Assembly: GCF_023055435.1 (NCBI RefSeq)
Contig: NW_025964383.1
Coordinates: 48,732,001 to 48,796,000 of the forward strand
DNA length: 64,000 nucleotides
Reading direction: 5' to 3'
From: Haliotis rufescens
Lineage: Eukaryota
The position numbers and the translations under genes are program-made. The notes beneath the pieces are model-generated. The model worked only from the letters and a program-made list of their open reading frames with translations. It did not search any database and was not told the origin of the DNA. Below are positions 2,132-43,735 of this stretch, one piece after another. The number at the start of each line of letters is the position of its first letter. Position 1 is the first letter of the stretch.

Positions 2132-2214
2132 GCACGTGTTCGATCACTGAAGATCTGTGATGCCACCAGGTGTTCACGAAATAGGTATACATGTCCTGCT
2201 ACTTCTACTTCAAT

Positions 2215-2345: not shown

Positions 2346-4222
2346 AAGCAGCATCTACTCACTAAATGTGCAGTGAAGTGACTGAAACATTCGCAACAGT
2401 CCATGCTATTGGGATACACAAACACAATGAAGCAGGCCACACAGTGACGTCAGTTGCCACAGCACGCATAGCTACAGGAACATATTCTGACCATGAAACC
2501 ACACAGGGCACCTGCTGAATGAGTTTCCACCCTGAGACATGAATATATTTACCCAACCTGTTTTTACTATATACACATTCAGCTATTGGATTTGTTAATG
2601 TTGATAATTTTCTTCTTCCATGTTTAAGACAAAGAACTGCAGGACATGGAACATTGACTGTTGACTTTATCACTACAACACGTGGTACTACGGTTATAAT
2701 TGTGGAGGTATACCACATGAACACATACCTGTAACACGCCCAACTCAATCCTGACACAAAGTCCTCAGACGTGGACGGACGAACCATTAAGCCACACAGG
2801 ACAGCGTTGACAGGCTGCCCCTTGTGTGAGAAGAGCGTGTACTGCATGTCTCAGCATGCAAGACCTGAAAGCAAAGGTTCTCATTGTGTTTGTTGAGCAT
2901 GCCAAGGGGATTGTTACAAACTCCTAGATACATGTATGGGGTACAGCCAGCTGTTAGACAACTATTACAGGGTATTCAGTGTTGTAATTCTGTATGCTGA
3001 GTAGGTAAGGGTTGTTGTTGGGTAGAGAATGTCGTGCGGTGTATTGAGTATAACTGACAGTGTTTAACCCATTCCGGTCACAGTTGTACTGTGATTCATC
3101 AAATTAATGCGACCCCATAGCCTAATGAAATGAATGCGAGTAGGCCTACCTTTATAGTGTTAAAGCAAAAAAAGGAAATTTAGAGCAGCTTAGAATCCTA
3201 TAATATAGCAAAAGAAACGTTTCAAGTATACTGTCACTGTACTTTGTTGCTCTGCGTTTCAATTCAAATCATTCAATTCTCACAGCGCGGTCATTTCGTC
3301 AAACCTGAGAGAAACGTGTCCCGAGATTGATATTTTATATACAACATTTGAATTCATGTGTGTGGTAGATTTATGCCGTTCAAGGATGTCGTCGGGATGC
3401 CCTTACCCATGCAACAATCGTACATTACACGGAACAGGCAAATTAGAAGTCATCAACACACAAGAATATATGGAAAGTTTCAAGCCGCGTTCAAATACAT
3501 TGCACTACGTTTTCAATGTACACAGCTAAATGTTATTATTTGACATCTCTAGACACGGATGTCCTATACTGTAAACAAAAACACAGTAGAAACAATACCA
3601 GCCAACATGGAACAGTCAGATCATTTGAGAGTACGAACAGTTTTGAAACTTTACTGCAGCCCAAGCCCAAGTATTGAAACCTGGTGTGGGTATGTAACAT
3701 TGGGACAATCTGACACGAGTTATGTCCCTTGTGTGGCGTACCCAACCTGGAGGACAGTTACAAGGAACGCGTGCTAAATACCAGTGTTACTTTTACTTGT
3801 TGGTGTGGGGTTCGGCTTCTGATTCTCCTCACAATGACCCCCCCTCCCATCACCCTGTCCGCCCCGGGGATAGTTATGGTCCCAGAACCTGTACACTTCA
3901 TCATTGCTGCAATGTCCAGCACACAGATCCCTCTCCGGACATGCGATCAAGGGGAGGTTATCCCAATCAGTCCGCCAAGGCTGCGGTGCTCTGTGTTGAA
4001 GATGGGTTAGCAAAATATATTTTTGATAAAGTAGATATGATGGAGTTCTGACACTCGCCATCTAAAGACAAACCAAAGTAACCTGATGAAATATTCCATA
4101 TTCTATTTTACCATCAATTCAATGTAGAATCTAAAAATTACATTTACTCATCGTACTATTTTCACAAAGGAACAAGAAAGCAAAACCTGTGATATGACCG
4201 GTGCATTTCAGGGTCGCAGCAG

Positions 4223-4397
4223 GTTAACGCATGTCAGTGTCTTGTGTAGGCGCATTGGGTTAACGCATGTCAGTGTCTTGTGTAGGCGCATTGGGTAAAC
4301 GCATGTCAGTGTCTTGTGTAGGCGCATTGGGTTAACGCATGTCAGTGTCTTGTGTAGGCGCATTGTGTTAACGCATGTCAGTGTCTTGTGTAGGCAC
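4223..4397. repeat. 36-bp tandem repeat, about 5 copies
   Basis: Unit GTTAACGCATGTCAGTGTCTTGTGTAGGCGCATTGG. Confidence 0.95.
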
Positions 4398-4613
4398 ATC
4401 GTATTACCTGGGGAACATGTACACGCATGCTCCTTGTGTTTGTAGTACAGACCTAGGATGAAACAGTGATGAACCACGTTTATATTCATCTGGTAATTAT
4501 CACCTCCTATGTATGACTTAAGGAGTGTAAACGTCCAGAATTCGTGAGATTGTATCCTCTAACCGGACATTAATCAGCTGTTTTAATTTGCTTCTTTCAT
4601 GCTCAGGGAGACA

Positions 4614-4665
4614 ATGTGGCCTTTTGGGGTTACAGTGATTGCATGGATGCTTATCCCCACACAAG
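4614..4665 (+). CDS. Gene A coding exon 1: signal peptide of SCARF/MEGF-like EGF receptor
   Basis: Pyrimidine tract+AG at 4605-6, ATG 4614, MWPFGVTVIAWMLIPTQ-G, donor GTAAG 4666 (phase 1); 52 coding nt, as in gene C exon 1. Confidence 0.8.
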
Positions 4666-5204
4666 GTAAGCAGATTAGTAATCTATATACATTGTGCTAC
4701 ATGAGGTAGGGCATCGTAAAGTGGGTCGCTTGTTGGCAGCGCTTCCAGAATGTTGACATTATTATTAAATTAGTTGATAAAAAACTATGCTCTTTGACGG
4801 TGTCACTCCAGCAAGAATAGACAATGCATTTGATGTCTTTGATGTCTAGTGTATATATAATTGACCCGTTTAAGATACAAATGTTTGATAACAATAATTG
4901 GTATTACTAAATAGCAAGGCGCGAGCGTCTGTAGTGCAGGGACAAGTTTCAATGACAAATACTGAAATCTCCCAACATCGATGGGCTTATTCAATGAGAT
5001 TGTGTGGAGATATAATAGATCGCTGAGAGGAACTTATGCACAACCTCTCCTTGGGCTGGCATCACATGGCATTGTTTAGCGGTGGCTGTTGCTACAATTA
5101 AAGTATGATGATATGGTCTGAGTCGTACAGTGGACTCTGACTTTTAATAGAAGAGATACGTTATGACTAAGGAAATTGTTTTGGTAGCTTTTATTTATTC
5201 TCAG

Positions 5205-6203
5205 GTGGTAAATGTTCCTATAACCAGCACTGCTCCGAGTGTGAGGACCAGACAGGTCGATGCAGCACCAACTGCTCTAAAGGATATTTCGGCCCAAAGT
5301 GCATGGATGTTTGCAGCAGAAGGTGCAGGTACCACACATGTCAGCTGCACCTCGACAGGGGGATTGGGAGATGTACTGATGGCTGCATACCAGGATTCCA
5401 AGGCCCAAACTGCCAGAGACCATGTTACACTCACCAGGTAGACTGTACCAGATGCCCAGGTGGATGTGATGGGAAGTATTGCCAGATGGGTGGAACTTGT
5501 TTCTCTGGCTGCAGCGACTCATACTACGGAGAAGGATGTAGGACGTGTTCCAGCAGATGCAAGTCCTGCAACAGGATCACAGGAACATGTGAGGAGTGTC
5601 AGCCTCCATATTCTGGACTGGACTGTAGATCCTCGTGTGAGCACTGTGTCGGTGGATGTGAGAGTGGCTGCCAACAGGGATGCAGACAAGGATTCTATGG
5701 AGACAACTGTACTGAAGCATGCAGTGACACCTGCCGAGCTGATCCCTCCCTGTCTACTGATGAACGATGTCCTGAGGGAGACTCATGTACCCCAGAGTGC
5801 CACAGCCAGACTGGCGAGTGTGTTCACGGTTGTGTAGATGGCTGGTACGGCCCGAAGTGTTCAAGGCGATGCAACCCTAAATGCACCCATCAAAGGTGCA
5901 ACCGCGCAGGTGCGTGTATTGAAGGATGTGCACCTGGACATGTCAGGTCTGATTGTGAACTGTGTCTGCAGCAATGCCTCAACCTCACCTGTGCCTTAAA
6001 CAACGGATCTTGTTGCAATGGTTGCAGCAGTGGTTTATTGGTAGAAAGCTGCAACCTATCTTGCAACGTATGTCTGGGTGGTATTGTTGGTATGAACACA
6101 AGTGTATGTATACTTGTGAAGAATATCACTCAATACATGTGTGGGTATAACTGTACAAACAACGGCTCATCACCTAGTTGCTCTGCCGGATCTTGTGTTA
6201 CAG
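5205..6203 (+). CDS. Gene A exon 2: multi-EGF-like (SCARF1/MEGF10-type) ectodomain
   Basis: Acceptor TTTATTCTCAG; open frame GKCSYNQHC...CxxGYFGPKC...GWYGPKC...SCVT continuous with ORF 5303-6217; donor GTAAGT 6204, phase 1-1. Confidence 0.93.
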
Positions 6204-6675
6204 GTAAGTCATGCTGATTGGTCTGACATATCGCTTGTTAATACTGATCTGGATTTTTTGGGTTCTTCTTTAATGTTTATCATAACAGCAGTAGTTGTTT
6301 CTGAAACGAAATGTTGAGAAATATTATCATAAAATTCCAAGTCAATATAAAGGTATTCTGAAATGTCACATTGGGAACTGTCTATGGGGGATTGTGAAAC
6401 ATGAAAGCAGTGATTGTGTTGCCTTGGTAATGTGTACTGTGTATTTTGAAAAAAACCCATTTACTTTATTCATGGTTTGAGATAAAGTTAATTAATTTAT
6501 CTTTTCTGAAAATAGATAATGCACCCTAAAACATTCAGAAAGACTTCAAATCAATTTCATGCACGGCGCACAATTTAGATGTTTGCCTGTTTGTAGGGAC
6601 AATAATACTCACTCATGTGGTCTTTGAATGTGAACAGCGCATAATGACCATTCAGCTGTCAGGTGCTCATACGCA

Positions 6676-23595: not shown

Positions 23596-23629
23596 ATGTT
23601 GCGACACGGTCTGCTGACCTCTTTATTTG
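23596..23629 (+). CDS. Gene B coding exon 1: signal peptide start (EGF-TM-ankyrin receptor)
   Basis: Strong acceptor TTCTTCTCTCTCACCCAG; ATG 23596 MLRHGLLTSLF-G; donor GTGAGT 23630, phase 1. Confidence 0.8.
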
Positions 23630-23929
23630 GTGAGTGCTGAGCTGTTTTAACTTCATTGACCAACATGCAATGATTACTCTGCTGTGCTGGTAAAATAATT
23701 GTTGTTGGGATGTTTGGGGAGTGTCCCAAAAGTCACTTAGCATTAATCCGCCATGACAAAGCACACGCATCGTGCTTTCTTAAAACAGTTTAGGTTTTAT
23801 AAGCGTTTTATTTTCGACTAAAGGTTTCTGGATCTAGAAATGGCGCCTACAAGAAGATATAACAAGGTATATTTTGACAAGTAGACCGCCAAGTATTGTG
23901 GGAAAATTAACTTCTTGCTCCTTTTTCAG

Positions 23930-24217
23930 GAGTGGGCGTATTGGGCGTACTGGGCCAGGAGTGTCCAGTGGGCAAATATGGAGAACACTGTCAACTGAAC
24001 TGCAGCCGTTCCTGTTTCCCCCATTCCGGCCAGGATGTGCACTGTGACAGACACAGTGGTAGATGCTCTGAGGGATGCGTGGCTGGACGGTTTGGTGCTC
24101 AGTGCCAACTCCCCTGCAGCAGGAACTGCCGGGGACACATCTGCAATCACCAGACCGGCCAGTGCACCCAGGGCTGTACAGGACACAATACGGGGGATTT
24201 CTGTGAAATACACCAAG
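23930..24217 (+). CDS. Gene B exon 2: rest of signal peptide plus short EGF-like ectodomain (14 Cys)
   Basis: Acceptor CTCCTTTTTCAG; VGVLGVLG-QECPVGKYGEHC...GRFGAQC...GDFCEIHQ; donor GTATGT 24218; phase 1-1. Confidence 0.92.
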
Positions 24218-24504
24218 GTATGTATATTGTTATGGGAAGAGAATCGGATACAAAATCCGTGACATTACATTGACTAAGTTTGACATGCTTGTCGTCCATC
24301 ACCGACTCCATGTGTATGTCCTCTCTTCCAAAATGGTAATCGAAGTAGATTTTTTCATAAACTGAACAATGTTCACTTCCTGTGGAGAATGAAATGCCGG
24401 TAACAGAGAAGGTGCATTAGGTATCTTACTAATTAAGGTAAGGACACTTCCAACATCAAGATTCCAGTTTGGAAATATATACGTCTAAGGGATCAGTCAC
24501 ATTC

Positions 24505-24970
24505 GGAGGAGGTGGTGTGGTGTGCTGGGTGTGGGGTGTGTGGAGTGCTAAGGGTGGGGTGTGTAGAGTGCTGGGGGTGTGGTGTGTGGTGTGCTGGGGT
24601 GTGTGGAGTGGTGAGGGTGGGGTGTGTGGAGTGGTGGGTGTGGGGGATGTGGAGTGGTGATGGTGGGGTGTGTCGAGTGCTGGGGGTGGGGTGCGTGGAG
24701 TGCTTGGTGTGGGGTGTGTGGATTGCTGGGTGTGGGGTGTGTGTGGTGTGTGGATGTTTGTGTGAGTGTCTGGGGGTTGTGTGGGGTGGGGTTGGGCTGG
24801 TGTGTGGAAGGGTCTGGGTGGGGTGTGTTTGGTTGGGTTTGGGTGTGTTGGGGTCAGGCTGTGTAGGGTGGGTGTGTGGGTGTGTGGGGTCGGTGGGGTA
24901 GGGTGTGGGGGACGTGGGCGAGGGTAAGGGGGTGTGTGGGTGTGTGTGGGTGGGGTGGGGTGGGGTGGGT
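24505..24970. repeat. G/GT-rich low-complexity tract
   Basis: Degenerate GGGGTGTG/TGGGG runs in gene B intron 2. Confidence 0.85.
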
Positions 24971-25537
24971 CTTCCGAGGTTTAAAGTCGTATTTGTCTTG
25001 CTACTTTAATAAGAACATATGTTCACTTTAGATTTAATAAGATACAACACAGGACTGAATCAGTGCACAGAGAGAAAGAGCCAGCCATTACCTTCAGTGT
25101 CGATCAAAAAATCAAACCGTACGCTCTCCCTGCGCCATCCTGAGAGAACATGTCCTGTTTGACCTCTGTTCAAGGGCCACACTGGTCGTATGCCACTGTA
25201 TAATTGCCGCTTGCACTGATGTTTTCCAAGACCATTGGTCACAATCCAACAAAGTAATATGGCTTACATGGCTTAAGGTCGAATATATACAGTGGGTTGT
25301 CTGGCGTGGTTACTTGACTGATTGTTTGGCATTGGCCCGATAGTGTGGATCATATTTCATCATACTTTCAATCACTGGTTGGTCCATTGTCGACTACGAA
25401 ATGGTTGGAATGTTACCGACTGCATTAAAATTAGCTTCGTCCTTCAATCACAATTCCCAGAGCAGTAGTCGGACAAACATTAGGATGTGTATGTAGTTGT
25501 GTTTGGTGACTGGACATAAGAGAGTCTTTTATTACAG

Positions 25538-25703
25538 AAAATGATCAGAAAGGTAATGACAACGGGAGGTCTGTAAATAAGACGGCTGAGTGGAGAAGAT
25601 CAGAACAGACTGCACCAACACCAATGGTTGCGATACTTGTCCCTGTGTTCGTCACAATCTTTCTGATAATCGGCGTCATCGTCACAGTGATTGTCTACAG
25701 AAG
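25538..25703 (+). CDS. Gene B exon 3: stalk and transmembrane helix
   Basis: Acceptor TTTTATTACAG; ENDQKG...TAPTP-MVAILVPVFVTIFLIIGVIVTVIVY-RR; donor GTACGA 25704; phase 1-2. Confidence 0.88.
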
Positions 25704-26100
25704 GTACGATTTCGGCTCAACTATCCAAATATGAATGTTTTGGGGCAATAACACACACACTTAAACTACAAACATATCGAGATGAATCACCCAATACACC
25801 CACAGTTTCACTACAAACCTGGTGATACATCCTGGATGTATGTCTTTAACTTGTACCCCGTGCCAGGCAGGAGAAGGTGTGTTTATATTTTCCATTAATG
25901 GAAAAGTAACGGGAAGAGGCATATTTACTAAAATATTAAAACAAAAACAGTTTCCAAATCGATGTTACTAATTCGTGGTTTTGTTGGAGGCGTGGCATTC
26001 AGAAACGTGTTTATGGTTGTAAAGTTTACACATCATATATATTTGATTTTAATTCACATCACCATTTGCAAGAACATTTTACTTAAATATTTGGACATGG

Positions 26101-29100
26101 CACCACAAGGACAGTGTAGGTATAGTGCAAGTGCAGAGAGGTGACATATCAGCCAACACACCATCAGGACAGTGTAGGTATAGTGCAAGTGCAGAGAGGT
26201 GACATATCAGCCAACACACCATCAGGACAGTGTAGGTATAGTGCAAGTGCAGAGAGGTGACATATCAGCCAACACACCATCAGGACAGTGTAGGTATAGT
26301 GCAAGTGCAGAGAGGTGACATATCAGCCAACACACCATCAGGACAGTGTAGGTATAGTGCAAGTGCAGAGAGGTGACATATCCGCCAACACACAATCAGG
26401 ACAGTGTAGGTATAGTGCAAGTGCAGAGAGGTGACATATCAGCCAACACACCATCAGGACAGGAAGGGAAAAGTGCAAGTGCAGAGAGGTGACATATCAG
26501 CCAACACACCATCAGGACAGTGTAGGTATAGTGCAAGTGCAGAGAGGTGACATATCAGCCAACACACCATCAGGACAGTGTAGGTATAGTGCAAGTGCAG
26601 AGAGGTGACATATCAGCCAACACACCATCAGGACAGTGTAGGTATAGTGCAAGTGCAGAGAGGTGACATATCAGCCAACACACCATCAGGACAGTGTAGG
26701 TATAGTGCAAGTGCAGATAGGTGACATATCAGCCAACACACCATCAGGACAGTGTAGGTATAGTGCAAGTGCAGAGAGGTGACATAGCCAACACACCATC
26801 AGGACAGTGTAGGTATAGTGCAAGTGCAGAGAGGTGACATATCAGCCAACACACCATCAGGACAGTGTAGGTATAGTGCAAGTGCAGAGAGGTGACATAT
26901 CAGCCAACACACCATCAGGACAATGTAGGTATAGTGCAAGTGCAGAGAGGTGACATATCAGCCAACACACCATCAGGACAGTGTAGGTATAGTGCAAGTG
27001 CAGAGAGGTGACATATCAGCCAACACACCATCAAGACAGTGTAGGTATAGTGCAAGTGCAGAGAGGTGACATATCAGCCAACACACCATCAGGACAGTGT
27101 AGGTATAGTGCAAGTGCAGAGAGGTGACATATCCGCCAACACACAATCAGGACAGTGTAGGTATAGTGCAAGTGCAGAGAGGTGACATATCAGACAACAC
27201 ACCATCAGGACAGGAAGGGAAAAGTGCAAGTGCAGAGAGGTGACATATCAGCCAACACACCATCAGGACAGTGTAGGTATAGTGCAAGTGCAGAGAGGTG
27301 ACATATCAGCCAACACACCATCAGGACAGTGTAGGTATAGTGCAAGTGCAGAGAGGTGACATATCAGCCAACACACCATCAGGACAGTGTAGGTATAGTG
27401 CAAGTGCAGAGAGGTGACATATCAGCCAACACACCATCAGGACAGTGTAGGTATAGTGCAAGTGCAGAGAGGTGACATAGCCAACACACCATCAGGACAG
27501 TGTAGGTATAGTGCAAGTGCAGAGAGGTGACATATCAGCCAACACACCATCAGGACAGTGTAGGTATAGTGCAAGTGCAGAGAGGTGACATATCAGCCAA
27601 CACACCATCAGGACAATGTAGGTATAGTGCAAGTGCAGAGAGGTGACATATCAGCCAACACACCATCAGGACAGTGTAGGTATAGTGCAAGTGCAGAGAG
27701 GTGACATATCAGCCAACACACCATCAGGACAGTGTAGGTATAGTGCAAGTGCAGGGAGGTGACATATCAGCCAACACACCATCAGCACAGTGTAGGTATA
27801 GTGCAAGTGTAGGGAGGTGACATAGCCAACACACAATCAGGACAGTGTAGGTATAGTGCAAGTGCAGAGAGGTGACATATCAGCCAACACACCATCAGGA
27901 CAGGAAGGGAAAAGTGCAAGTGCAGAGAGGTGACATAGCCAACACACCATCAGGACAGTGTAGGTATAGTGCAAGTGCAGATAGGTGACATATCAGCCAA
28001 CACACCATCAGGACAGTGTAGGTATAGTGCAAGTGCAGAGGGGTGACATAGCCAACACACCATCAGGACAGAGTAGGTATAGTGCAAGTGCAGAGAGGTG
28101 ACATAGCCAACACACCATCAGGACAGTGTAGGTATAGTGCAAGTGCAGATAGGTGACATATCAGCCAACACACCATCAGGACAGTGTAGGTATAGTGCAA
28201 GTGCAGAGAGGTGACATATCAGCCAACACACCATCAGGAGAGTGTAGGTATAGTGCAAGTGCAGAGAGGTGACATATCAGCCAACACTCCATCAGGACAG
28301 TGTAGGTATAGTGCAAGTGCAGAGAGGTGACATATCAGCCAACACTCCATCAGGACAGTGTAGGTATAGTGCAAGTGCAGAGAGGTGACATATCAGCCAA
28401 CACACCATCAGGACAGTGTAGGTATGGTGCAAGTGCAGGGAGGTGACATATCAGCCAACACACCATCAGCACAGTGTAGGTATAGTGCAAGTGTAGGGAG
28501 GTGACATAGCCAACACACAATCAGGACAGTGTAGGTATAGTGCAAGTGCAGAGAGGTGACATATCAGCCAACACACCATCAGGACAGGAAGGGAAAAGTG
28601 CAAGTGCAGAGAGGTGACATATCAGCCAACACACCATCAGGACAGAGTAGGTATAGTGCAAGTGCAGAGAGGTGACATATCAGCCAACACACCATCAGGA
28701 CAGTGTAGGTATGGTGCAAGTGCAGGGAGGTGACATATCAGCCAACACACCATCAGCACAGTGTAGGTATAGTGCAAGTGTAGGGAGGTGACATAGCCAA
28801 CACACAATCAGGACAGTGTAGGTATAGTGCAAGTGCAGAGAGGTGACATATCAGCCAACACACCATCAGGACAGGAAGGGAAAAGTGCAAGTGCAGAGAG
28901 GTGACATAGCCAACACACCATCAGGACAGTGTAGGTATAGTGCAAGTGCAGATAGGTGACATATCAGCCAACACACCATCAGGACAGTGTAGGTATAGTG
29001 CAAGTGCAGAGGGGTGACATAGCCAACACACCATCAGGACAGAGTAGGTATAGTGCAAGTGCAGAGAGGTGACATAGCCAACACACCATCAGGACAGAGT

Positions 29101-31661
29101 AGGTATAGTGCAAGTGCAGGGAGGTGACATAGCCAACACACCATCAGGACAGTGTAGGTATAGTGCAAGTGCAGAGAGGTGACATAGCCAACACACCATC
29201 AGGACAGTGTAGGTATGGTGCAAGTGCAGAGAGGTGGCATATCAGCCAACACACCATCAGGACAGTGTAGGTGTAGTGTAAGTGCAGAAAGGTGACATAT
29301 CAGCCAACACACAATCAGGACAGTGTAGGTATAGTGCAAGTGCAGAGAGGTGAGATAGCCAACACACCATCAGGACAGTGTAGGTATAGTGCAAGTGCAG
29401 AGAGGTGACATATCAGCCAACACACCATCAGGACAGTGTAGGTATAGTGCAAGTGCAGAGAGGTGACATATCAGCCAACACACCATCAGGAGAGTGTAGG
29501 TATAGTGCAAGTGCAGAGAGGTGACATAGCCAACACACCATCAGGACAGTGTAGGTATAGTGCAAGTGCAGAGAGGTGACATATCAGCCAACACACCATC
29601 AGGACAGTGTAGGTATAGTGCAAGTGCAGAGAGGTGACATATCAGCCAACACACCATCAGGAGAGTGTAGGTATAGTGCAAGTGCAGAGAGGTGACATAT
29701 CAGCCAACACACCATCAGGACAGTGTAGGTATAGTGCAAGTGCAGAGAGGTGACATATCAGCCAACACACCATCAGGACAGAGTAGGTATAGTGCAAGTG
29801 CAGAGAGGTGACATATCAGCCAACACACCATCAGGACAGTGTAGGTATGGTGCAAGTGCAGGGAGGTGACATATCAGCCAACACACCGTCAGCACAGTGT
29901 AGGTATAGTGCAACTGTAGGGAGGTGACATAGCCAACACACAATCAGGACAGTGTAGGTATAGTGCAAGTGCAGAGAGGTGACATATCAGCCAACACACC
30001 ATCAGGACAGGAAGGGAAAAGTGCAAGTGCAGAGAGGTGACATAGCCAACACACCATCAGGACAGTGTAGGTATAGTGCAAGTGCAGATAGGTGACATAT
30101 CAGCCAACACACCATCAGGACAGTGTAGGTATAGTGCAAGTGCAGAGAGGTGACATATCAGCCAACACACCATCAGGACAGAGTAGGTATAGTGCAAGTG
30201 CAGAGAGGTGACATAGCCAACACACCATCAGGACAGTGTAGGTATAGTGCAAGTGCAGAGAGGTGACATAGCCAACACACCATCAGGACAGTGTAGGTAT
30301 GGTGCAAGTGCAGAGAGGTGGCATATCAGCCAACACACCATCAGGACAGTGTAGGTGTAGTGTAAGTGCAGAAAGGTGACATATCAGCCAACACACCATC
30401 AGGACAGTGTAGGTATAGTGCAAGTGCAGAGAGGTGACATAGCCAACACACCATCAGGACAGTGTAGGTATAGTGCAAGTGCAGAGAGGTGACATATCAG
30501 CCAACACACCATCAGGACAGTGTAGGTATAGTGCAAGTGCAGAGAGGTGACATATCAGCCAACACACCATCAGGAGAGTGTAGGTATAGTGCAAGTGCAG
30601 AGAGGTGACATAGCCAACACACCATCAGGACAGTGTAGGTATAGTGCAAGTGCAGAGAGGTGACATATCAGCCAACACACCATCAGGAGAGTGTAGGTAT
30701 AGTGCAAGTGCAGAGAGGTGACATATCAGCCAACACACCATCAGGACAGTGTAGGTATAGTGCAAGTGCAGAGAGGTGACATATCAGCCAACACACCATC
30801 AGGACAGTGTAGGTATAGTGCAAGTGCAGAGAGGTGACATATCAGCCAACACACCATCAGGACAGTGTAGGTATAGTGCAAGTGCAGAGAGGTGACATAT
30901 CAGCCAACCCACCATCAGGACAGTGTAGGTATAGTGCAAGTGCAGAGAGGTGACATATCAGCCAACACACCATCAGGACAGTGTAGGTATGGTGCAAGTG
31001 CAGGGAGGTGACATATCAGCCAACACACCATCAGCACAGTGTAGGTATAGTGCAAGTGCAGAGAGGTGACATAGCCAACACACAATCAGGACAGTGTAGG
31101 TATAGTGCAAGTGCAGAGAGGTGACATATCAGCCAACACACCATCAGGACAGGAAGGGAAAAGTGCAAGTGCAGAGAGGTGACATATCAGCCAACACACC
31201 ATCAGGACAGTGTAGGTATAGTGCAAGTGCAGAGAGGTGACATATCAGCCAACACACCATCAGGACAGTGTAGGTATAGTGCAAGTGCAGAGAGGTGACA
31301 TATCAGCCAACACACCATCAGGACAGTGTAGGTATAGTGCAAGTGCAGAGAGGTGACATATCAGCCAACACACCATCAGGACAGGAAGGGAAAAGTGCAA
31401 GTGCAGAGAGGTGACATATCAGCCAACACACCATCAGGACAATGTAGGTATAGTGCAAGTGCAGAGAGGTGACATATCAGCCAACACACCATCAGGACAG
31501 TGTAGGTATAGTGCAAGTGCAGAGAGGTGACATATCCGCCAACACACCATCAGGACAGTGTAGGTATAGTGCAAGTGCAGAGAGGTGACATATCAGCCAA
31601 CACACCATCAGGAGAGTGTAGGTATAGTGCAAGTGCAGAGAGGTGACATAGCCAACACACC
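26101..31661. repeat. 58-bp satellite in gene B intron 3
   Basis: Unit CAGGACAGTGTAGGTATAGTGCAAGTGCAGAGAGGTGACATATCAGCCAACACACCAT; 55-bp deletion variant and GGAAGGGAAAA variant; about 97 units. Confidence 0.98.
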
Positions 31662-31851
31662 TATGATAACAACAGCAGAAAGCAAGACAACGGGACCGGA
31701 AGCGAGGTATAACACACTTCCGCGTATCGTTGATTCTACACTTGATGAGACACGGAAAGTTGCGGGACATACGCAAACCAAGCAGCTTAATTCCCTTATC
31801 TACCGACTTTGCTTGTCAACGAATATGAAAGGCGAATACTGGATTCTCTGG

Positions 31852-33980
31852 TCCATCACGTGGTTGTCTGGTTTGTTTGGGGGCGGCGTCAGGCAACACA
31901 CAAACTCTTACATTTTTATACAAATTGTGTGAGTGGCGCATGGAACCGGCGGGGCAGGAACCTTGTCGTGGGCACCTGGTGTCATCACTGATTGTTAGTG
32001 CCCCATTCATACACAATGCACGTGCTACCGGCGGGGCGGGAACCTTGTCGTGGGCACCGGGTGTCATCACTGATTGTTAGTGCCCCATTCATACACAATG
32101 TACGTGCTACCGGCGGGGCGGGAACCTTATCGTGGGCACCGGGTGTCATCACTGATTGTTAGTGCCCCATTCATACACAATGTACGTGCTACCGGCGGGG
32201 CAGGAACCTTGTCGTGGGCACCTGGTGTCATCACTGATTGTTAGTGCCCCCTTCATACACAATGTACGTGCTACCGGCGGGGCGGGAACCTTGTCGTGGG
32301 CACCGGGTGTCATCACTGATTGTTAGTGCCCCCTTCATACACAATGTACGTGCTACCGGCGGGGCGGGAACCTTGTCGTGGGCACCGGGTGTCATCACTG
32401 ATTGTTAGTGCCCCCTTCATACACAATGTACGTGCTACCGGCGGGGCGGGAACCTTGTCGTGGGCACCGGGTGTCATCACTGATTGTTAGTGCCCCATTC
32501 ATACACAATGTACGTGCTACCGGCGGGGCGGGAACCTTGTCGTGGGCACCGGGTGTCATCACTGATTGTTAGTGCCCCATTCATACACAATGTACGTGCT
32601 ACCGGCGGGGCGGGAACCTTGTCGTGGGCACCGGGTGTCATCACTGATTGTTAGTGCCCCATTCATACACAATGTACGTGCTACCGGCAGGGCGGGAACC
32701 TTGTCGTGGGCACCGGGTGTCATCACTGATTGTTAGTGCCCCATTCATACACAATGTACGTGCTACCGGCGGGGCGGGAACCTTGTCGTGGGCACCGGGT
32801 GTCATCACTGATTGTTAGTGCCCCATTCATACACAATGTACGTGCTACCGGCGGGGCGGGAACCTTGTCGTGGGCACCGGGTGTCATCACTGATTGTTAG
32901 TGCCCCATTCATACACAATGTACGTGCTACCGGCGGGGCGGGAACCTTGTCGTGGGCACCGGGTGTCATCACTGATTGTTAGTGCCCCCTTCATACACAA
33001 TGTACGTGCTACCGGCGGGGCGGGAACCTTATCGTGGGCACCGGGTGTCATCACTTTAATGTTAGTGCCCCATTCATACACAATGTACGTGCTACCGGCG
33101 GGGCGGGAACCTTGTCGTGGGCACCTGGTGTCATCACTGATTGTTAGTGCCCCCTTCATACACAATGTACGTGCTACCGGCGGGGCGGGAACCTTATCGT
33201 GGGCACCGGGTGTCATCACTTTAATGTTAGTGCCCCATTCATACACAATGTACGTGCTACCGGCGGGGCGGGAACCTTGTCGTGGGCACCGGGTGTCATC
33301 ACTGATTGTTAGTGCCCCATTCATACACAATGCACGTGCTACCGGCGGGGCGGGAACCTTGTCGTGGGCACCGGGTGTCATCACTGATTGTTAGTGCCCC
33401 ATTCATACACAATGTACGTGCTACCGGCGGGGCAGGAACCTTGTCGTGGGCACCTGGTGTCATCACTGATTGTTAGTGCCCCATTCATACACAATGCACG
33501 TGCTACCGGCGGGGCGGGAACCTTGTCGTGGGCACCGGGTGTCATCACTGATTGTTAGTGCCCCATTCATACACAATGTACGTGCTACCGGCGGGGCGGG
33601 AACCTTGTCGTGGGCACCGGGCGTCATCACTGATTGTTAGTGCCCCATTCATACACAATGTACGTGCTACCGGCGGGGCAGGAACCTTGTCGTGGGCACC
33701 GGGTGTCATCACTGATTGTTAGTGCCCCATTCATACACAATGTACGTGCTACCGGCGGGGCGGGAACCTTGTCGTGGGCACCGGGTGTCATCACTGATTG
33801 TTAGTGCCCCATTCATACACAATGTACGTGCTACCGGCGGGGCGGGAACCTTGTCGTGGGCACCGGGTGTCATCACTGATTGTTAGTGCCCCATTCATAC
33901 ACAATGTACGTGCTACCGCTAGTTTGCCGTTTGTTCCCAATGGAATCTGTTTCGATGGATAATCAAGAAAACATTCAGGT
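31852..33980 (+). mobile_element. Dispersed repeat (family C composite) hosting the 82-bp satellite
   Basis: Both flanks of the array align with single-unit copies at 38848-39003 (+) and 40771-41010 (-). Confidence 0.7.
31946..33918. repeat. 82-bp GC-rich satellite, about 24 copies
   Basis: Unit ACCGGCGGGGCGGGAACCTTGTCGTGGGCACCGGGTGTCATCACTGATTGTTAGTGCCCCATTCATACACAATGTACGTGCT. Confidence 0.98.
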
Positions 33981-34105
33981 CGATTTAAATCAATTATGTT
34001 CCAAATACCATTCCTTTCATGGATATGTCCTTCATGTATGTCAATATGTAGCTAGATCTTTTGAAGTAAATGGACTTCCAAAGATTATTTTCTTTCTTCT
34101 TACAG

Positions 34106-34135
34106 ACACAGAAAAGCAAGAAGAGGACAAACAAG
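34106..34135 (+). CDS. Gene B exon 4: basic juxtamembrane segment
   Basis: Strong acceptor TTTTCTTTCTTCTTACAG; HRKARRGQT; donor GTAAAA 34136; phase 2-2. Confidence 0.72.
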
Positions 34136-34479
34136 GTAAAACCAGAACACGGTGAACATTTCATCACCGTCAACGAGTACATGTTCATGAATGATGTGTT
34201 CAGTGGTAAATACATACAGAGGGTTGAGTGAATGGCATTACGCATCAGGAAGCAGTCATCGAGCTCAGAGTCTCTATAGGCATTCAGAAGTTGGTTGTAA
34301 ACATCACATGGAGATTTAATGTTGATAACAACTTCTTTATTATTCTTATCATGGTTAACTATTGCAAATGCAAGTAATTAATATATGTACATTTACTATG
34401 CTTGAAAAGGATCAATTATCTTTTGATTGTTTGTTTAAATGCCATCAACTACTTATGTGTGTTTTCTGTCATTTTGCAG

Positions 34480-34487
34480 TTCGGCTG
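34480..34487 (+). CDS. Gene B exon 5: 8-nt microexon (TTCGGCTG)
   Basis: Acceptor GTTTTCTGTCATTTTGCAG and donor GTGAGT flank 8 nt that convert phase 2 to phase 1, as needed to reach the ankyrin exon. Confidence 0.62.
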
Positions 34488-35084
34488 GTGAGTGCTCAAA
34501 CGTCACTTTGAAAATATACAGCCGTCGTATTGAAAAGTTATAGCAGTAGGTATTGGTCCTCAGCAACTGGTGACCGGGTAAGAAATTACAGTGGTATGCA
34601 CACAGCATTACAATGCGAGGACATTTTTCACATTAGAAAGAAGGTAAGCTCAGCTGTGTCGCCTACAGTGAATTTAACTACATCAGCAATGTCGCGGAAA
34701 TCATCTTATTATGGCCATCGTCCAAAATATGTTAATAACTATCAATCGTATCAATCAAATGTATCAGGGCTTACAATTATTTACCATGTCAGGGAAGCAT
34801 GGCGACAACCACAGTATTGTATGGATGATATTTAGAAATAGCTTTGCAGCATGGACTCCATCAATTATCTAGTTGCATGTCTGAGACGTGACATAATTGG
34901 CGGGTTTCGTGGGTAAACGTCTCAGCCTGCATCACACAAGGCTTTCCTCCAACTTGTGACAAAGACTCACCTTTATTGTTAGCCAAATTGGCCAGTATTT
35001 AGGTCATTAGAGTTTAGTACTGTAGACAAAATAATTTATATATGATGTAAATTCATGCAGATACCTTTAACGTCTCATTCACAG

Positions 35085-35120
35085 ATGGACCCGTCCCTGA
35101 CGGAGAGACTTTACTTCCAG
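35085..35120 (+). CDS. Gene B exon 6: 36-nt linker exon
   Basis: Acceptor TCTCATTCACAG; DGPVPDGETLLP-G; donor CAG|GTAAGT; phase 1-1. Confidence 0.75.
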
Positions 35121-35519
35121 GTAAGTTTAGACACATCTACATAAACCAGACAGTTTTGCTGAAGTAAGCACTTTCTATAATGAACTCCTACATTGGATTA
35201 CATGACTAGCTCGCTGTCATTCTCATATAAAGGATCTCCTCTGGTCATTAAAAGGAGAGAGGTGTAAATTGATAGCTGCAATACTATTCCTTTACACCAT
35301 TAAAAGTATATCATCAAATTGCGAACTTAAAAACGAAGAGAACCCCTCCGAAGGTATATGGATCAGAGTTAAATGTATTACAACTACATTATGTTTTATC
35401 AAATATGATAGTCATTGTATCAGATTAAGATACCTTTTTCAACGTAGTCCAGTACTAAAATAATATTTGAATACTGACAGTAAATGTCTTTGTCGACAAA
35501 TAAAACGACCAATGACATG

Positions 35520-35740
35520 ATCGTGCTCACCTTTTCGTGAAGACCTGGTGTCATCACTATTTGATGGAGATTAACACATTCACGCTCATGATGTACGGAA
35601 GTGTAAAATCGATCTCTTATGATAATGGAAAGGACATCGCCGGTTATATTTTATGAATCGCTAACAAATTGTGATGATGCCAGGACCTGGTGTCCGCGAA
35701 CAGGTGCGCCCATCCTGTCTCACCGCGGTGCCCGTCACAA
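35520..35740. mobile_element. Family C element with two inverted arms (MITE-like)
   Basis: GCTCACCTTTTCGTGAAGACCTGGTGTCATCACTATTT is inverted relative to AAATTGTGATGATGCCAGG...CCGCGAACAGGTGCGC. Confidence 0.55.
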
Positions 35741-36052
35741 ACACATGCAACACCAAGTCAATTGTTCACGGGCACACGGGAACTTATGGTACACGTCAAG
35801 AGAGGGATTTGTATCGGAACTGATTTTTATCACAAATGCACCAGTTATTATTGTGATGAAGTTTGAAATTAGTAACAATAAGTTGACATTCATTCCCAAG
35901 TATTTTCTGCTGAACGTAAGCCATGTTCGTGTATTATCTTGTAGAAACATGCAAAGACTTGTAAACTGTGGGAGAGTTCAGGTACTCGTCATACGATCGA
36001 AATTTTATTTCATATTAAAAATTTAATTAAAATAACCATGTTTCGTCACCAG

Positions 36053-36636
36053 GAGAACAATGCAGTATGGACACCAGGCTGAGTAGTGCTTGTCATAAGG
36101 GAGATCTAAGCCTGGTTAAACAGATGTTATCTGAGAGCCCCGAGGACATCAACAAGCGCGGCCAGTGCGGGAGGACATCCGTGATGGCGGCAGTGTACCG
36201 AGGACATACACACATAGTGAAGTTACTTGTGAGTCGTGGAGGCGACCTGTCCCTCGTTGATGATAATGGCGACAACATCCTTCACTTGGCGTGTGGTGGA
36301 GGCCATGAGAGCACGGTGAGGTATCTCCTGTCACAGGACGTTCCAGACATCAACAGCAGAGGCCAGAAGGGAAAGACTCCCGTCATGACGGCAGCCTACA
36401 TCGGGTATAAAGAAATGTTTGACTTACTTGTTTTAAAAGGCGCTGATGTGTCACTCGTGGACAATGACGGCAATAACATCCTCCACCATGCTTGTAAGGG
36501 CGGGGATGTACAGATAGTGAAGTATGTCCTCTCGCAGGACAAGGTGAACATCAGCACAAAGAACAATGCTGGGCAAACAGCAGCCATGATAGCGAAACAC
36601 CACGGCCATAATTCACTGTGCAGTCTTCTGTTATGA
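36053..36636 (+). CDS. Gene B exon 7: cytoplasmic ankyrin-repeat domain (about 6 repeats), stop
   Basis: Acceptor CGTCACCAG, phase 1; GRTSVMAA, GDNILHLAC, GKTPVMTAA, GNNILHHAC, GQTAAMIA ankyrin motifs; AATAAA near 36986. Joined CDS 1146 nt = 381 aa. Confidence 0.93.
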
Positions 36637-37366
36637 GCCGGTCACGTGGGCGACTTGAGTATGATGCTGTATCGGACATTCTAGACATGGTGTATACAAC
36701 AGTGCAATACAACAGTGCAATACAACGATGTACAACAACATACACGTCATTGTTATACATGTGTGCATCCGAGTAGAACACAGACAGGTCTCACATGACA
36801 CAGGGAAAAAGGACAGCTGATTTCTGCCGATTTGAATCATGCATTTCCAGAACCAATTGTGGTTCACTTTATTCTACGAATACTCATTACCCCAAATTAC
36901 AAATATTGAACATTTGGGGGATTTATAAAATCGGGAAATACAATGTTGAAGAAATGTTTAGACACCCTATCTAATAATAACAACGAATAAATCGATTTTT
37001 TAATATTTCTTTTCATCTTTCATCTTTTCATCGCAAGTCGCCCTTAACAATTGTATTTATTGATGTTTCCCAGACATGTGTTTTGCTTAATAAATCGGGA
37101 TCAAGTTTTATTTTAAATTTGAATGCGGTTGTGTCTCAGAAGACGGTATTATATCTGCTAATGTCTGCAAAACTTCCTAAATTCCATTTAATATTTCTCA
37201 ATTCAGGGAATCATTAATTAAGATTTAAGTCGGTACAGTTCAGTCATAGTGTGATTTTGTGAGGGAGGCTTGTTTGTGGCTGAGCACATGACAAATAAAG
37301 AATACAAAACTTGGCGTTTTCTCGTTTGTGTGACATTTACTATCTAATGCAAAACTCGTTCTATTG

Positions 37367-42226: not shown

Positions 42227-43192
42227 GTGCTCGATGTAGGGACAACCAGCAGTGTTCTGACTGTGATGACAACACCGCCAACTGCCTCACACAGTGCCAC
42301 AAAGGATACTTCGGCCAGACATGCAGATCCGTGTGCAGCAGTAACTGTAGGAATAACACCTGTCAGCTCATTGCCAGCAGAGGTATTGGTAGGTGCACTG
42401 AAGGCTGCGAGCCAGGATACCAGGGCTACAACTGCATCCGACCGTGTGGCCGCCACATTGTCACCTGTACACCATGTCCAGGTGGGTGTGACGGGAACTA
42501 CTGCCACATTGGCCGAACCTGTTATGAAGGATGTAAAGAGTCTTTCTACGGGTTAGAGTGTAAGACCTGTTCTGACGAATGCAAAGTTTGCAACAGAAAG
42601 ACAGGAATATGTGAGGAATGTCGTCCACCACATTTTGGTCCTAACTGTGAACACTCGTGCGTGAACTGTTTAGGTTCATGCGAGGATGGGTGTACCATTG
42701 GCTGTGTTCCTGGGTTCTATGGGAATTTCTGTACCGAGATTTGCAGCGAAGGTTGTCGACCTCCTTACTCCATCTATACAGTTGACGAGTGTCAGGCGGA
42801 TGATGTCAATCTGTCGGCCGACTGTAGACCTGAGTGTCACAACCAGAGTGGTGAATGTGTTTATGGTTGTTTAGATGGTTGGTATGGTCCACAGTGCTCC
42901 TCCCAGTGTAGCCCTCGCTGTGCACATCAACGTTGTGATGGTGTTGGAGATTGTGTAGAAGGATGTGTTGTTGGTCGGTGGGGCTCTAGCTGTGAGTCAT
43001 GTTCTGAGAATTGTCTCCATCAAGCGTGCCACACCAACAGCGGTCTGTGCCTGCATGGCTGCTCCAGCGGCCACCATGGGGAATACTGTAACCTGACTTG
43101 TACGTCGTGTTCAACTGACGGATGTCAGCAAACTGTCAACTGTACAAGCAACTATACACTACCAGAGGACCTTGCAGGATCTTTCAACACAA
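42227..43192 (+). CDS. Gene C exon 2: multi-EGF-like (SCARF1/MEGF10-type) ectodomain
   Basis: Acceptor TTCTGACAG; ARCRDNQQC... in frame with ORF 42331-43314; Cys pattern collinear with gene A exon 2; donor GTAAGT 43193; phase 1-1. Confidence 0.93.
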
Positions 43193-43281
43193 GTAAGTGT
43201 GAAGGAAGTAGATTGCATACATATGTTTCTCCCATTGATGTCTGCAACCAGGAAGCAAACCAGATAGTTTGGAAAATGATG

Positions 43282-43735
43282 GATGGTTTTCTACAGGTTT
43301 TACCTAATTTGTAGATGGTTTTCTACAGGTTTTACCTAATCTGTAAATGGTTTTCTACAAGTTTTACCTAATCTGTAGATGGTTTTCTACAAGTTTTACC
43401 TAATCTGTAGATGGTTTTCTACAAGTTTTACCTAATCTGTAGATGGTTTTCTACAAGTTTTACCTAATTTGTAGATGGTTTTCTACAGGTTTTACCTAAT
43501 TTGTAGATGATTTTCTACAAGTTTTACCTAATCTGTAGATGGTTTTCTACAAGTTTTACCTAATCTGTAGATGGTTTTCTACAAGTTTTACCTAATCTGT
43601 AGATGGTTTCCTACAAGTTTTACCTAATCTGTAGATGGTTTTCTACAAGTTTTACCTAATTTGTAGAGTGTTTCCTACAGGTTTTACCTAATCTGTAGAT
43701 GGTTTTCTACAAGTTTTACCTAATCTGTAGATGGT
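43282..43735. repeat. 32-bp minisatellite, about 14 copies
   Basis: Unit AGATGGTTTTCTACAAGTTTTACCTAATCTGT. Confidence 0.96.

What the first reader, a model, noticed from the sequence alone, without database searches (positions are those of the whole stretch)
23596..36636. 'Mini-Notch'-like architecture: signal peptide - EGF - TM - basic motif - ankyrin repeats
Seen: seven exons join in frame to a 381-aa protein with a short EGF ectodomain, a Val/Ile-rich TM (…LIIGVIVTVIVY), a basic stretch RRHRKARR and about 6 ankyrin repeats. The ORF track alone would split this into unrelated EGF and ankyrin ORFs 12 kb apart. Known: extracellular EGF with intracellular ankyrin is the Notch layout, but LNR/NOD, a RAM WxP motif and PEST are not visible here and the EGFs are SCARF/MEGF type. 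Inference: convergent assembly by exon shuffling. The basic stretch might act as an NLS if intramembrane proteolysis released the ankyrin domain, or the tail may be a membrane-tethered scaffold.
Basis: partly seen in the sequence, partly recalled or inferred. Interest (0 to 1): 0.8.

Follow-up and report, generated by a model that had tools for sequence, protein, structure and literature searches.

The report
Abalone EGF-membrane-ankyrin receptor gene
The seven exons do form one real, expressed red-abalone gene for a small membrane protein with an EGF-like outside and an ankyrin-repeat inside. It is already in RefSeq under a misleading name, belongs to an abalone gene family, and is not a Notch relative.

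Summary
The window is Haliotis rufescens chromosome contig C605.

RNA assemblies from four runs in two studies join exon 4, the 8-nt microexon, exon 6 and the ankyrin exon at GT..AG borders. Each full contig carries about 390-400 more letters 5' of exon 4. The black-abalone orthologue has the same joins and has Ile where the supposed separate start (ATG 36067) would be.

Five close paralogues nearby, and 16 database proteins from four Haliotis species, share the layout: signal peptide, 14-Cys EGF-like module, TM, basic stretch, short linker, ankyrin repeats. They also share the intron phases and a frame-fixing micro-exon.

It is not Notch. There is no LNR, NOD, RAM or PEST. The ectodomain is nearest to SCARF1 and laminin-type EGF, though weakly. 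The ankyrin repeats are nearest to abalone's own hugely expanded ankyrin genes.

The likeliest role is a membrane-tethered receptor or scaffold, with a conserved acidic-dileucine-like sorting motif in the linker. Cleavage-and-release signalling is not excluded but has no support. This is a new variant of a known kind, of modest interest. Another report of this scan describes a related EGF-TM-NTPase-ankyrin family in the same genome; I did not test that link.

The parts
23596..23629 (+). Exon 1: start codon and most of the signal peptide (MLRHGLLTSLF + 1 nt), leaves in phase 1
   Evidence: Sequence. Equals residues 1-11 of XP_048246865.1.
23930..24217 (+). Exon 2: end of the signal peptide plus a 14-cysteine EGF-like module, a symmetric phase 1-1 exon
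   Evidence: The 14 Cys are invariant in 23 paralogous exons. AF2 pLDDT is 88. The best PDB match is SCARF1 8hna, Foldseek E 3e-3 and VIA Z 3.8.
25538..25703 (+). Exon 3: stalk with an NKT glycosylation sequon, the TM helix and the first two Arg; phase 1 in, phase 2 out
   Evidence: Hydrophobic segment at 133-162. Helix at 138-171 in the model. The donor is homologous to those of the paralogous TM exons.
25704..34105 (+). Intron 3 (8.4 kb), swollen by a 58-bp x97 minisatellite (26101-31661) and an 82-bp x24 minisatellite (31945-33918)
   Evidence: Tandem Repeats Finder. The many short ORFs here are repeat read-through.
34106..34135 (+). Exon 4 (30 nt): basic stretch HRKARRGQT, phase 2-2
   Evidence: Present in the RNA contigs of 4 runs, joined onward at 34135.
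34480..34487 (+). Exon 5: 8-nt microexon TTCGGCTG that moves the frame from phase 2 to phase 1
   Evidence: The letters TTCGGCT, plus a G laid on position 35084, lie between 34135 and 35085 in contigs of X1, X4 and X7; X2 has TTCGCCT (tables 5 and 5c). Paralogues have an 11-nt or 20-nt exon with the same phase change.
35085..35120 (+). Exon 6 (36 nt): linker GPVPDGETLLP carrying a [DE]xxxL[LI] motif (DGETLL), phase 1-1
   Evidence: The joint 35120>36053 is GT..AG in 4 runs. The motif is kept in 11 of 16 family proteins.
36053..36636 (+). Exon 7: six ankyrin repeats and the stop codon
   Evidence: Pfam Ank_2 at E 2e-51. Six helix pairs at pLDDT above 90. RNA contigs cover it.
36637..37229 (+). 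3' untranslated region as far as the RNA contigs reach
   Evidence: Contigs end at 37196 (X1), 37229 (X2), 37205 (X4) and 37001 (X7) (table 8).

Best explanation
Shown: window 23596-36636 (+) is one expressed seven-exon gene of Haliotis rufescens (RefSeq XP_048246865.1, 381 aa). It encodes a type I membrane protein with these parts: a signal peptide, one exon with a 14-cysteine SCARF/laminin-type EGF-like module, a short disordered stalk, one TM helix, a juxtamembrane basic stretch, a roughly 25-residue disordered linker, and six ankyrin repeats that end the protein. It is the short-tailed member of a tandem cluster on this chromosome (six close copies between 47.95 and 48.77 Mb of C605). It belongs to a family present in at least four Haliotis species. 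Family members share the exon order, the intron phases and a small phase-correcting exon.

Inferred: the protein sits in the plasma or endosomal membrane with the EGF module outside as a binding surface. The basic residues act as the positive-inside stop-transfer signal. The conserved acidic-dileucine-like motif of the linker exon directs adaptor-mediated sorting or endocytosis. The ankyrin stack serves as a membrane-tethered docking platform for cytosolic partners. This would make it a lineage-specific recognition receptor or scaffold of the kind that expands in invertebrate defence-type gene clusters. It arose by joining two modules that are each massively amplified in abalone, not by descent from Notch.
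For: Gene model: exon borders and phases. Every exon translation is found in P0121, which is XP_048246865.1.

RNA: one contig per run in four runs from two studies joins e4, the microexon, e6 and e7 at GT..AG borders. The X1 and X2 contigs carry 388 and 400 unplaced letters 5' of e4. That fits e3 (166 nt) plus most of e2.

Orthologue: P0140 (H. cracherodii, 94% identical) has the same joins and reads SIDTRL where the window has SMDTRL, so the putative internal start is not conserved. No stand-alone ankyrin protein of 106-338 aa matches e7 at high identity; the best is 58%.

Family: all five closest EGF-exon paralogues have a TM exon and an ankyrin exon downstream on the same strand. RefSeq models P0001, P0026 and P0020, plus models from H. 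cracherodii, H. rubra and H. asinina, show the same layout. Micro- or mini-exons of 11 and 20 nt keep the phase 2 to 1 step.

Fold: EGF module; TM helix and six ankyrin repeats.

Sorting motif: [DE]xxxL[LI] at the aligned linker position in 11 of 16 members.

Not Notch: no LNR, NOD or NODP by Pfam. The genome's only LNR hits lie on C594 and C556. The best solved relatives of the ankyrin exon are NOMPC, ankyrin-1/2 and DARPins, with no Notch or IkB in the first 60. The closest ankyrin relatives are all Haliotis proteins.

Context: ankyrin genes are expanded and clustered on one abalone chromosome and are discussed as defence-related (PMC12627906; PMC5405107).
Against: The e3>e4 join was not seen in reads. 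It rests on RefSeq models in two species, on frame logic and on contig length. No ligand, partner, location or tissue is known, so the receptor/scaffold role and the sorting motif are inferences from sequence. The EGF assignment is weak by score (Foldseek E 3e-3, Z 3.8, no Pfam hit). This copy has 6 ankyrin repeats against about 10 in its relatives, its intron 3 is bloated by minisatellites, and its C-terminus differs from the orthologue's; it could be a drifting member. Five of 16 family members lack the dileucine-like motif.
Confidence: 0.6

Rival explanations
1. Convergent mini-Notch. Ligand binding leads to shedding and gamma-secretase-type cleavage in the Val/Ile-rich TM. The freed basic-stretch-plus-ankyrin fragment then enters the nucleus or cytosol to signal.
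For: The layout EGF - single TM - ankyrin is otherwise typical of Notch. A protein-language-model search puts Notch clusters nearest to the whole protein, at score 0.90 but with only 118-127 of 256 shared features. The protein is type I with a small ectodomain and a basic cluster after the TM.
Against: There is no LNR/NOD negative regulatory region, no RAM WxP, and no PEST or transactivation region. The basic residues abut the membrane and are not conserved in sequence or spacing among paralogues. The ankyrin repeats are of the generic abalone-expanded type, not the Notch or IkB type. The Atlas score lies in the range the tool itself calls a lead only. Nothing tests cleavage.
Confidence: 0.08
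2. Two genes: an EGF-TM gene ending near 25.7 kb and a separate ankyrin gene starting at ATG 36067 or in exons 4-6. The joined model would then be an annotation or read-through artefact.
For: A gene caller run on one RNA assembly called only the 189-aa ORF from the internal ATG (P0141). The e3>e4 junction was not observed directly. Tandem duplication could copy a two-gene unit.
Against: Exons 4, 5 and 6 have no usable start codon in frame, yet they are spliced to e7 in four runs. The contigs continue 388-400 nt further 5' onto sequence that does not lie in 33930-34105. The orthologue has Ile at that ATG. The ankyrin exons of the paralogues begin in phase 1 without an ATG. RefSeq models in four species join the parts. 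No separate ankyrin model exists for this locus in the 106-338 aa range.
Confidence: 0.03
3. A transcribed but functionally drifting by-product of a fast-shuffling gene cluster. This copy would be a shortened mosaic with no specific role of its own.
For: It has six repeats against about ten in relatives. The ectodomain is 76-79% identical to P0001 and P0026, but the ankyrin part is only 45-47% identical. The ankyrin tree places it outside the 100/100 clade that holds its ectodomain relatives. The 8.4-kb intron is full of minisatellites. The C-terminus differs from that of the H. cracherodii model.
Against: The ORF is intact and 94-96% identical between two species in every part, including the linker and the microexon. 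It is expressed in four runs from two studies. All splice sites are canonical. The AU test does not reject the ankyrin part grouping with its ectodomain relatives, either nested among them or as sister to their clade (p 0.26-0.27), so a fast-evolving rather than swapped tail is equally possible.
Confidence: 0.2

Closest known systems
Notch receptors
   Same: Type I membrane protein with EGF-type modules outside, one TM helix and an ankyrin-repeat domain inside. Both were assembled by domain shuffling from widespread modules (Gazave et al. 2009, PMC2770060).
   Different: It has no LNR, NOD/NODP, RAM, PEST or TAD. It has one 14-Cys SCARF/laminin-type module instead of 10-36 hEGF/cbEGF repeats. 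It has six generic ankyrin repeats that end the protein. The true Notch LNR exons of this genome lie on other contigs.
SCARF1/SREC-I and MEGF10/MEGF11/Draper/CED-1 scavenger and engulfment receptors
   Same: The ectodomain cysteine pattern and predicted fold are nearest to the SCARF1 N-terminal EGF-like region (8hna) and to laminin-type EGF. The nearest Atlas clusters for residues 1-170 are molluscan 'MEGF10' and 'scavenger receptor class F member 1-like'. Both are single-pass type I proteins.
   Different: The ectodomain is much shorter and has no EMI domain. The tail has ankyrin repeats instead of NPxY/YxxL or a Ser/Pro-rich tail (read from the sequence). Similarity scores are weak: E 3e-3, Z 3.8, and no Pfam EGF hit.
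Abalone-expanded soluble ankyrin-repeat proteins (RefSeq 'ANKRD50-like', 'RF_0381-like', 'PPP6 ankyrin subunit-like')
   Same: The ankyrin exon is 44-59% identical to hundreds of ORFs in this genome and to Haliotis proteins only. It shares their two-repeat periodicity and clustered chromosomal location (PMC12627906).
   Different: Those proteins lack a signal peptide, EGF module and TM. Only 15 of the 121 proteins screened (the hits) carried them.
Abalone membrane-anchored STAND/NLR-like receptors (SP-EGF-TM-NTPase-ankyrin), reported elsewhere in this scan (s1-812734)
   Same: The same genome, and by that note the same kind of small EGF ectodomain, TM anchor and ankyrin array.
   Different: No NTPase domain is present here (Pfam).

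Membership tests
Notch | LNR (Lin-12/Notch) repeats, one of the three core domains EGF+LNR+ANK (PMC2770060) | tested here: not met
   There is no PF00066 hit on P0121 at E up to 5. A six-frame search of the whole genome finds LNR only at C594:27.69 Mb and C556:29.29 Mb, and none on C605.
Notch | NOD/NODP heterodimerisation region | tested here: not met
   No Pfam hit. Only about 45 disordered residues lie between the EGF module and the TM.
Notch | RAM region with WxP after the TM | tested here: not met
   Residues 163-193 (RRHRKARRGQTSSADGPVPDGETLLPGEQCS) contain no Trp.
Notch | Tandem hEGF/cbEGF repeats | tested here: not met
   Pfam EGF, hEGF and EGF_CA give no hit. One 14-Cys module is nearest to SCARF1 and laminin-type EGF.
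Notch | Intracellular ankyrin domain | tested here: met
   There are six repeats, but Notch is not among the 60 best solved relatives.
Notch | C-terminal TAD/PEST | tested here: not met
   The protein ends at the last ankyrin helix, residue 381.
Notch | Ligand-dependent S2/S3 cleavage | not testable with these tools
   This needs biochemistry.
SCARF / MEGF10 / Draper scavenger-engulfment receptors | Interlocked EGF-like modules of SCARF/MEGF type in the ectodomain | tested here: inconclusive
   SCARF1 8hna is the top hit in Foldseek (E 3e-3, probability 1.00) and in VIA-align (Z 3.8, 81 residues). A profile search of PDB lists SCARF1 only at E 0.22. The nearest Atlas clusters are molluscan MEGF10-like and SCARF1-like at 0.87.
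SCARF / MEGF10 / Draper scavenger-engulfment receptors | Cytoplasmic NPxY / YxxL (MEGF10, Draper) or long Ser/Pro-rich tail (SCARF1) | tested here: not met
   Reading residues 163-381 of P0121 shows no NPxY and no YxxL/I. The tail is ankyrin repeats.
AKR1-type ankyrin palmitoyltransferase (the RefSeq name) | DHHC zinc-finger acyltransferase domain with multiple TM helices | tested here: not met
   There is no DHHC hit by Pfam and only one TM helix. The name reflects ankyrin similarity only.
Haliotis EGF-TM-ankyrin family (RefSeq 'ANKRD17/50-like', XP_048246276, XP_048246506, XP_048246507 and others) | Same exon order and intron phases: SP | EGF (1-1) | stalk+TM (1-2) | micro/mini-exon (2-1) | linker (1-1) | ankyrin (1-) | tested here: met
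   Window exons. Paralogues P2 and P3 were mapped exon by exon. The full-length alignment has 14 invariant Cys and an aligned TM, linker and ankyrin N-cap. The ectodomain clade has 100/98 support.

The most novel reading that the evidence does not exclude
The family is a convergent, minimal Notch-like signalling device. Binding at the EGF module triggers shedding and intramembrane cleavage, and the released ankyrin fragment signals in the cytosol or nucleus. The 8-nt microexon could also act as a switch, because skipping it gives a stop five codons into exon 6 and so a tail-less receptor.
Probability: 0.07. Interest if true: 0.8.

Novelty: new variant of a known kind. Interest (0 to 1): 0.33.

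Why it matters
The result shows that the ORF track would indeed mislead here: EGF and ankyrin ORFs 12 kb apart belong to one protein. It corrects a misleading RefSeq name, since the protein has no DHHC domain and is not a palmitoyltransferase.

It defines a family in at least four Haliotis species that couples a scavenger-receptor-like ectodomain to an ankyrin platform. The family lies in the ankyrin-rich, structurally unstable chromosome region that abalone papers link to defence and stress resilience.

It also gives a clean natural example of receptor assembly from phase-compatible exons, including a conserved frame-setting microexon. The interest is modest. New domain combinations are expected in expanded invertebrate gene clusters, and no function has been shown.

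Tried and rejected
1. Pfam on the EGF exon and on the whole protein gave no EGF-family hit. Sequence and profile searches of PDB with the EGF exon gave only chance-level hits. The EGF call therefore rests on the cysteine pattern and the fold.

2. I considered a direct in-frame splice from e3 (phase 2) to the AG at 36064-36065. It is possible on paper, but no contig shows it; all four use 36053.

3. I tested whether the ankyrin tail was swapped in from another lineage. The trees disagree, but the AU tests do not reject common descent (p 0.27 and 0.26). This stays open.

4. I asked whether EGF and ankyrin adjacency is just chance in an ankyrin-rich region. Of the nine further EGF exons checked in this region, only two had an ankyrin exon downstream in the stretch fetched (about 11-18 kb). 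All six of the close subfamily have one. So the link is specific to the subfamily.

5. I looked at an EGF hit inside a 1784-aa open frame (L060) as a possible EGF-TM-NTPase relative. It is an EGF exon running into a 21-bp minisatellite.

6. Pfam on L006 failed because I chose the wrong frame, and I did not pursue it.

8. I did not use the big protein search. Its list of 150 best hits would be filled by Haliotis paralogues and could not settle whether the layout exists outside the genus.

9. I never joined the exons into a query myself. All searches of the window used single exons. The joined protein turned up as a public record through a search with a paralogue, and I used it only by its database id.

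Full report
**What the window is.** A search with an ankyrin exon of a nearby paralogue returned a 100% identical RefSeq protein of Haliotis rufescens, on a contig of 49,480,045 bases. That is the length of contig C605, which holds the window at 48,732,001-48,796,000. The window is rich in minisatellites, with 19 tandem-array rows.

**Checking the observation.**
- I read the seven exons in the sequence and verified borders and phases by script.
- The exons are e1 23596-23629, e2 23930-24217, e3 25538-25703, e4 34106-34135, e5 34480-34487, e6 35085-35120 and e7 36053-36636.
- All acceptors are pyrimidine-rich and end in AG. All donors are GT, mostly GTAAGT- or GTGAGT-like.
- The phases run 0>1>1>2>2>1>1 and the sum is 1146 nt, or 381 aa plus a stop.
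- The joined protein appeared on its own as a database record. A search with residues 1-170 of the paralogue protein P0001 returned P0121, 381 aa, from the same contig.
- Each exon's translation occurs in P0121 at residues 1, 13, 109, 164, 174, 177 and 189.
- P0121 is XP_048246865.1, "palmitoyltransferase AKR1-like [Haliotis rufescens]".

**RNA evidence.**
- Eighteen public runs hold at least part of the ankyrin exon and its 3' flank.
- I laid the contigs of four of them (two studies) on window 33930-37300.
- In each run one contig skips 34135>35084. The letters TTCGGCT lie in between (TTCGCCT in X2), followed by a G laid on 35084. That is the microexon TTCGGCTG.
- Each contig also skips 35120>36053 with GT..AG ends, then covers e7 and about 560 nt of 3' UTR. 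The runs are therefore RNA.
- The X1 contig (1610 nt) and the X2 contig (1655 nt) have 462 and 474 letters before e7. That is 388 and 400 letters beyond e4+e5+e6 (74 nt), and these letters do not lie on 33930-34105.
- This length fits e3 (166 nt) plus most of e2, but I could not read those letters.
- So e4-e5-e6-e7 is shown directly.

**The orthologue argues against a separate ankyrin gene.**
- The 90%-identity cluster of P0121 holds a Haliotis cracherodii protein, XP_071085549.1 (P0140, 426 aa).
- Its sequence runs …VIVYRRHRKARRGQTSSPDGPVPDGETLLPGEQCSIDTRL….
- All the joins are the same. The Met of "ATG 36067" is Ile, so that start is not conserved.
- A search with e7 over the 106-338 aa range found no near-identical stand-alone ankyrin protein; the best hit is 58% identical.
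- The one 189-aa ORF in the cluster (P0141) is a gene call on an RNA assembly contig of 1642 nt. That is what an ORF caller does with a transcript that is incomplete at its 5' end.

**The family.**
- The EGF exon has five close paralogues on C605 (72-83% identical by genome search).
- Each is followed on the same strand by a TM exon and an ankyrin exon within 5-13 kb.
- RefSeq proteins for two of them (P0001, P0026), for P0020, and for H. cracherodii, H. rubra and H. asinina genes show signal peptide, EGF module, TM, basic residues, linker and ankyrin repeats.
- A simple screen found this layout in 15 of 121 ankyrin hits. With P0140 that makes 16 proteins, which I aligned.
- In paralogues P2, P3, P4 and P5 the TM exon ends …RHRK or …RRRK; in P1 and in the window gene it ends …RR. 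In every case the donor follows in phase 2. The ankyrin exons start in phase 1 without an ATG.
- Between the TM exon and the ankyrin exon lie a small exon of length 2 mod 3 and a phase 1-1 linker exon. The small exon is 11 nt (ATCTAATCAGG) in P2 and 20 nt in P3.
- The window gene has the same plan, with an extra 30-nt exon (e4) and an 8-nt microexon. The microexon is thus a family feature and not an artefact.
- Among nine further EGF exons in the region, only two have an ankyrin exon downstream in the 11-18 kb fetched. The pairing is therefore specific to this family and not a by-product of ankyrin density.

**What the parts are.**
- *Ectodomain:* Pfam's EGF models do not score, and sequence searches of PDB give nothing significant.
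- An alignment of 23 paralogous exons has 14 invariant cysteines in a pattern repeated twice. AlphaFold gives a confident model (pLDDT 88).
- Its best Foldseek match is the N-terminal EGF-like fragment of human SCARF1 (8hna, E 3e-3, probability 1.00). Behind it come only EGF arrays: Notch, Jagged, laminin LE and Tie2.
- VIA-align gives Z 3.8 for SCARF1 and 3.0-3.4 for laminin-type EGF and netrin. These scores are low, as expected for a thin, extended module.
- The Atlas feature search with residues 1-170 lists molluscan "MEGF10" and "scavenger receptor class F member 1-like" clusters.
- *Whole protein:* the full-length model shows a disordered stalk, a helix at 138-171 (TM plus basic stretch), a disordered linker and six ankyrin helix pairs at pLDDT above 90.
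- *Ankyrin exon:* its best solved relatives are NOMPC, ankyrin-1/2, DARPins, latrotoxins, Kidins220 and TRPA1, with no Notch or IkB in the first 60. In the protein database its closest relatives are all Haliotis proteins at no more than 58% identity. In the genome it matches 273 places, out of 2349 candidate sites.

**Not Notch.**
- Gazave et al. (PMC2770060) give EGF, LNR and ANK as the core of Notch.
- LNR, NOD and NODP are absent from the protein. The only LNR matches in the genome are on C594 and C556.
- There is no Trp in the juxtamembrane region, so no WxP, and the protein stops at the last ankyrin helix.
- The Atlas search with the whole protein does put Notch clusters first. The score is 0.90 with only 118-127 of 256 shared features, which the tool flags as a lead and which reflects the shared layout.
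- The RefSeq name is also wrong in substance: there is no DHHC domain and only one TM helix.

**How it most likely works (inference).**
- The basic residues lie directly after the TM helix and differ freely among paralogues. That fits a positive-inside stop-transfer signal better than a conserved NLS.
- The linker exon carries DGETLL, which fits the acidic dileucine pattern [DE]xxxL[LI].
- The same pattern stands at the aligned place in 11 of 16 family members (ESGELL, EGTQLL, EGDSLI, ESDGLI, EGIALI). This suggests adaptor-dependent sorting or endocytosis.
- Together with a SCARF-like ectodomain and a terminal ankyrin stack, the simplest reading is a membrane-tethered recognition receptor or scaffold.
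- Abalone papers describe expanded, clustered ankyrin genes on a structurally unstable chromosome and link them to defence and resilience (PMC12627906; PMC5405107). None of the four literature searches turned up a description of this EGF-TM-ankyrin layout.

**Origin.**
- e2 is a symmetric phase 1-1 exon of a type with 1548 candidate sites in the genome, so module shuffling is plausible.
- The ectodomain tree groups the window protein with P0001-3, P0026 and P0022 (100/98). The ankyrin tree leaves it outside a 100/100 clade that holds those proteins together with ones whose ectodomains are only about 50% identical.
- AU tests do not reject the ankyrin part grouping with its ectodomain relatives, either nested among them or as sister to their clade (p 0.26-0.27).
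- A swapped tail and a fast-evolving, shortened tail therefore both remain possible.

**Limits.**
- The distribution outside Haliotis was not tested.
- The big protein search was not used, because its top 150 would be filled by Haliotis paralogues.
- A note from this scan describes an EGF-TM-NTPase-ankyrin family in the same genome (s1-812734).

**Verdict.** This is a RefSeq-annotated but mis-named member of a family known so far only from Haliotis. It is a new variant of single-pass EGF receptors, not a Notch relative, and of modest interest.

Noticed in passing
window 5303-6217 (+) and 42331-43314 (+): Two paralogous open frames of about 300 aa, packed with EGF-like cysteine repeats (MEGF/SCARF-like). 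One lies upstream and one downstream of the gene, on the same strand.
   Followed up: partly
window 62138-62407 (+), and C605:48796001-48812000 (L051, L052): A further 14-Cys EGF exon of the same type, 51% identical to e2. No ankyrin exon like e7 was found in the 16 kb after the window's end.
   Followed up: partly
window 26101-31661 and 31945-33918: Intron 3 holds a 58-bp x97 minisatellite and an 82-bp x24 minisatellite. Arrays of 12- to 85-bp units fill large parts of the whole window.
   Followed up: no
window 34106-34114 compared with L019, L020/L015 and L022 TM-exon ends: The first nine bases of e4 (ACACAGAAA) equal the last nine bases of the TM exon in paralogues P2, P3 and P5. The spliced window mRNA thus recreates what is one exon there. 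e4 may be a displaced or duplicated exon end.
   Followed up: no
window 35524-35572 and 35731-35769 (intron 6): Two short stretches are covered by many unrelated RNA contigs at high depth, and one joint links them on opposite strands. This looks like the inverted ends of a high-copy transcribed repeat.
   Followed up: no
window 34480-34487 and 36209: Run X2 reads the microexon as TTCGCCT(G), giving Pro instead of Ala, as in the H. cracherodii protein (SSP). Runs X4 and X7 read A for C at 36209, giving Lys instead of Thr, as in P0140 and P0141.
   Followed up: partly
window 36620-36776: The H. cracherodii orthologue continues for 45 aa in the frame of window ORF 36618-36776 (SRSRGRLEYDAVS…). 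An indel near the stop, with a length that is not a multiple of three, separates the two species' C-termini.
   Followed up: partly
L060 (C568:1811800-1817300), ORF 87-5399: A signal peptide and an EGF exon of the same type run in frame into about 1650 aa of TTGTQIQ heptads coded by a 21-bp minisatellite. This is either a mucin-like stalk or an intronic array read through.
   Followed up: no
P0035 (H. cracherodii): Its ectodomain groups with P0020 (99/95) but its ankyrin part groups with P0022 and P0026 (100/100). This is either a module swap between family members or a chimeric gene model.
   Followed up: no
L022 (C605:48493000-48502999), paralogue P5: The ankyrin open frame of paralogue P5 stops after 46 aa, although ankyrin similarity continues beyond. 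The copy may carry a frameshift or an extra intron.
   Followed up: no
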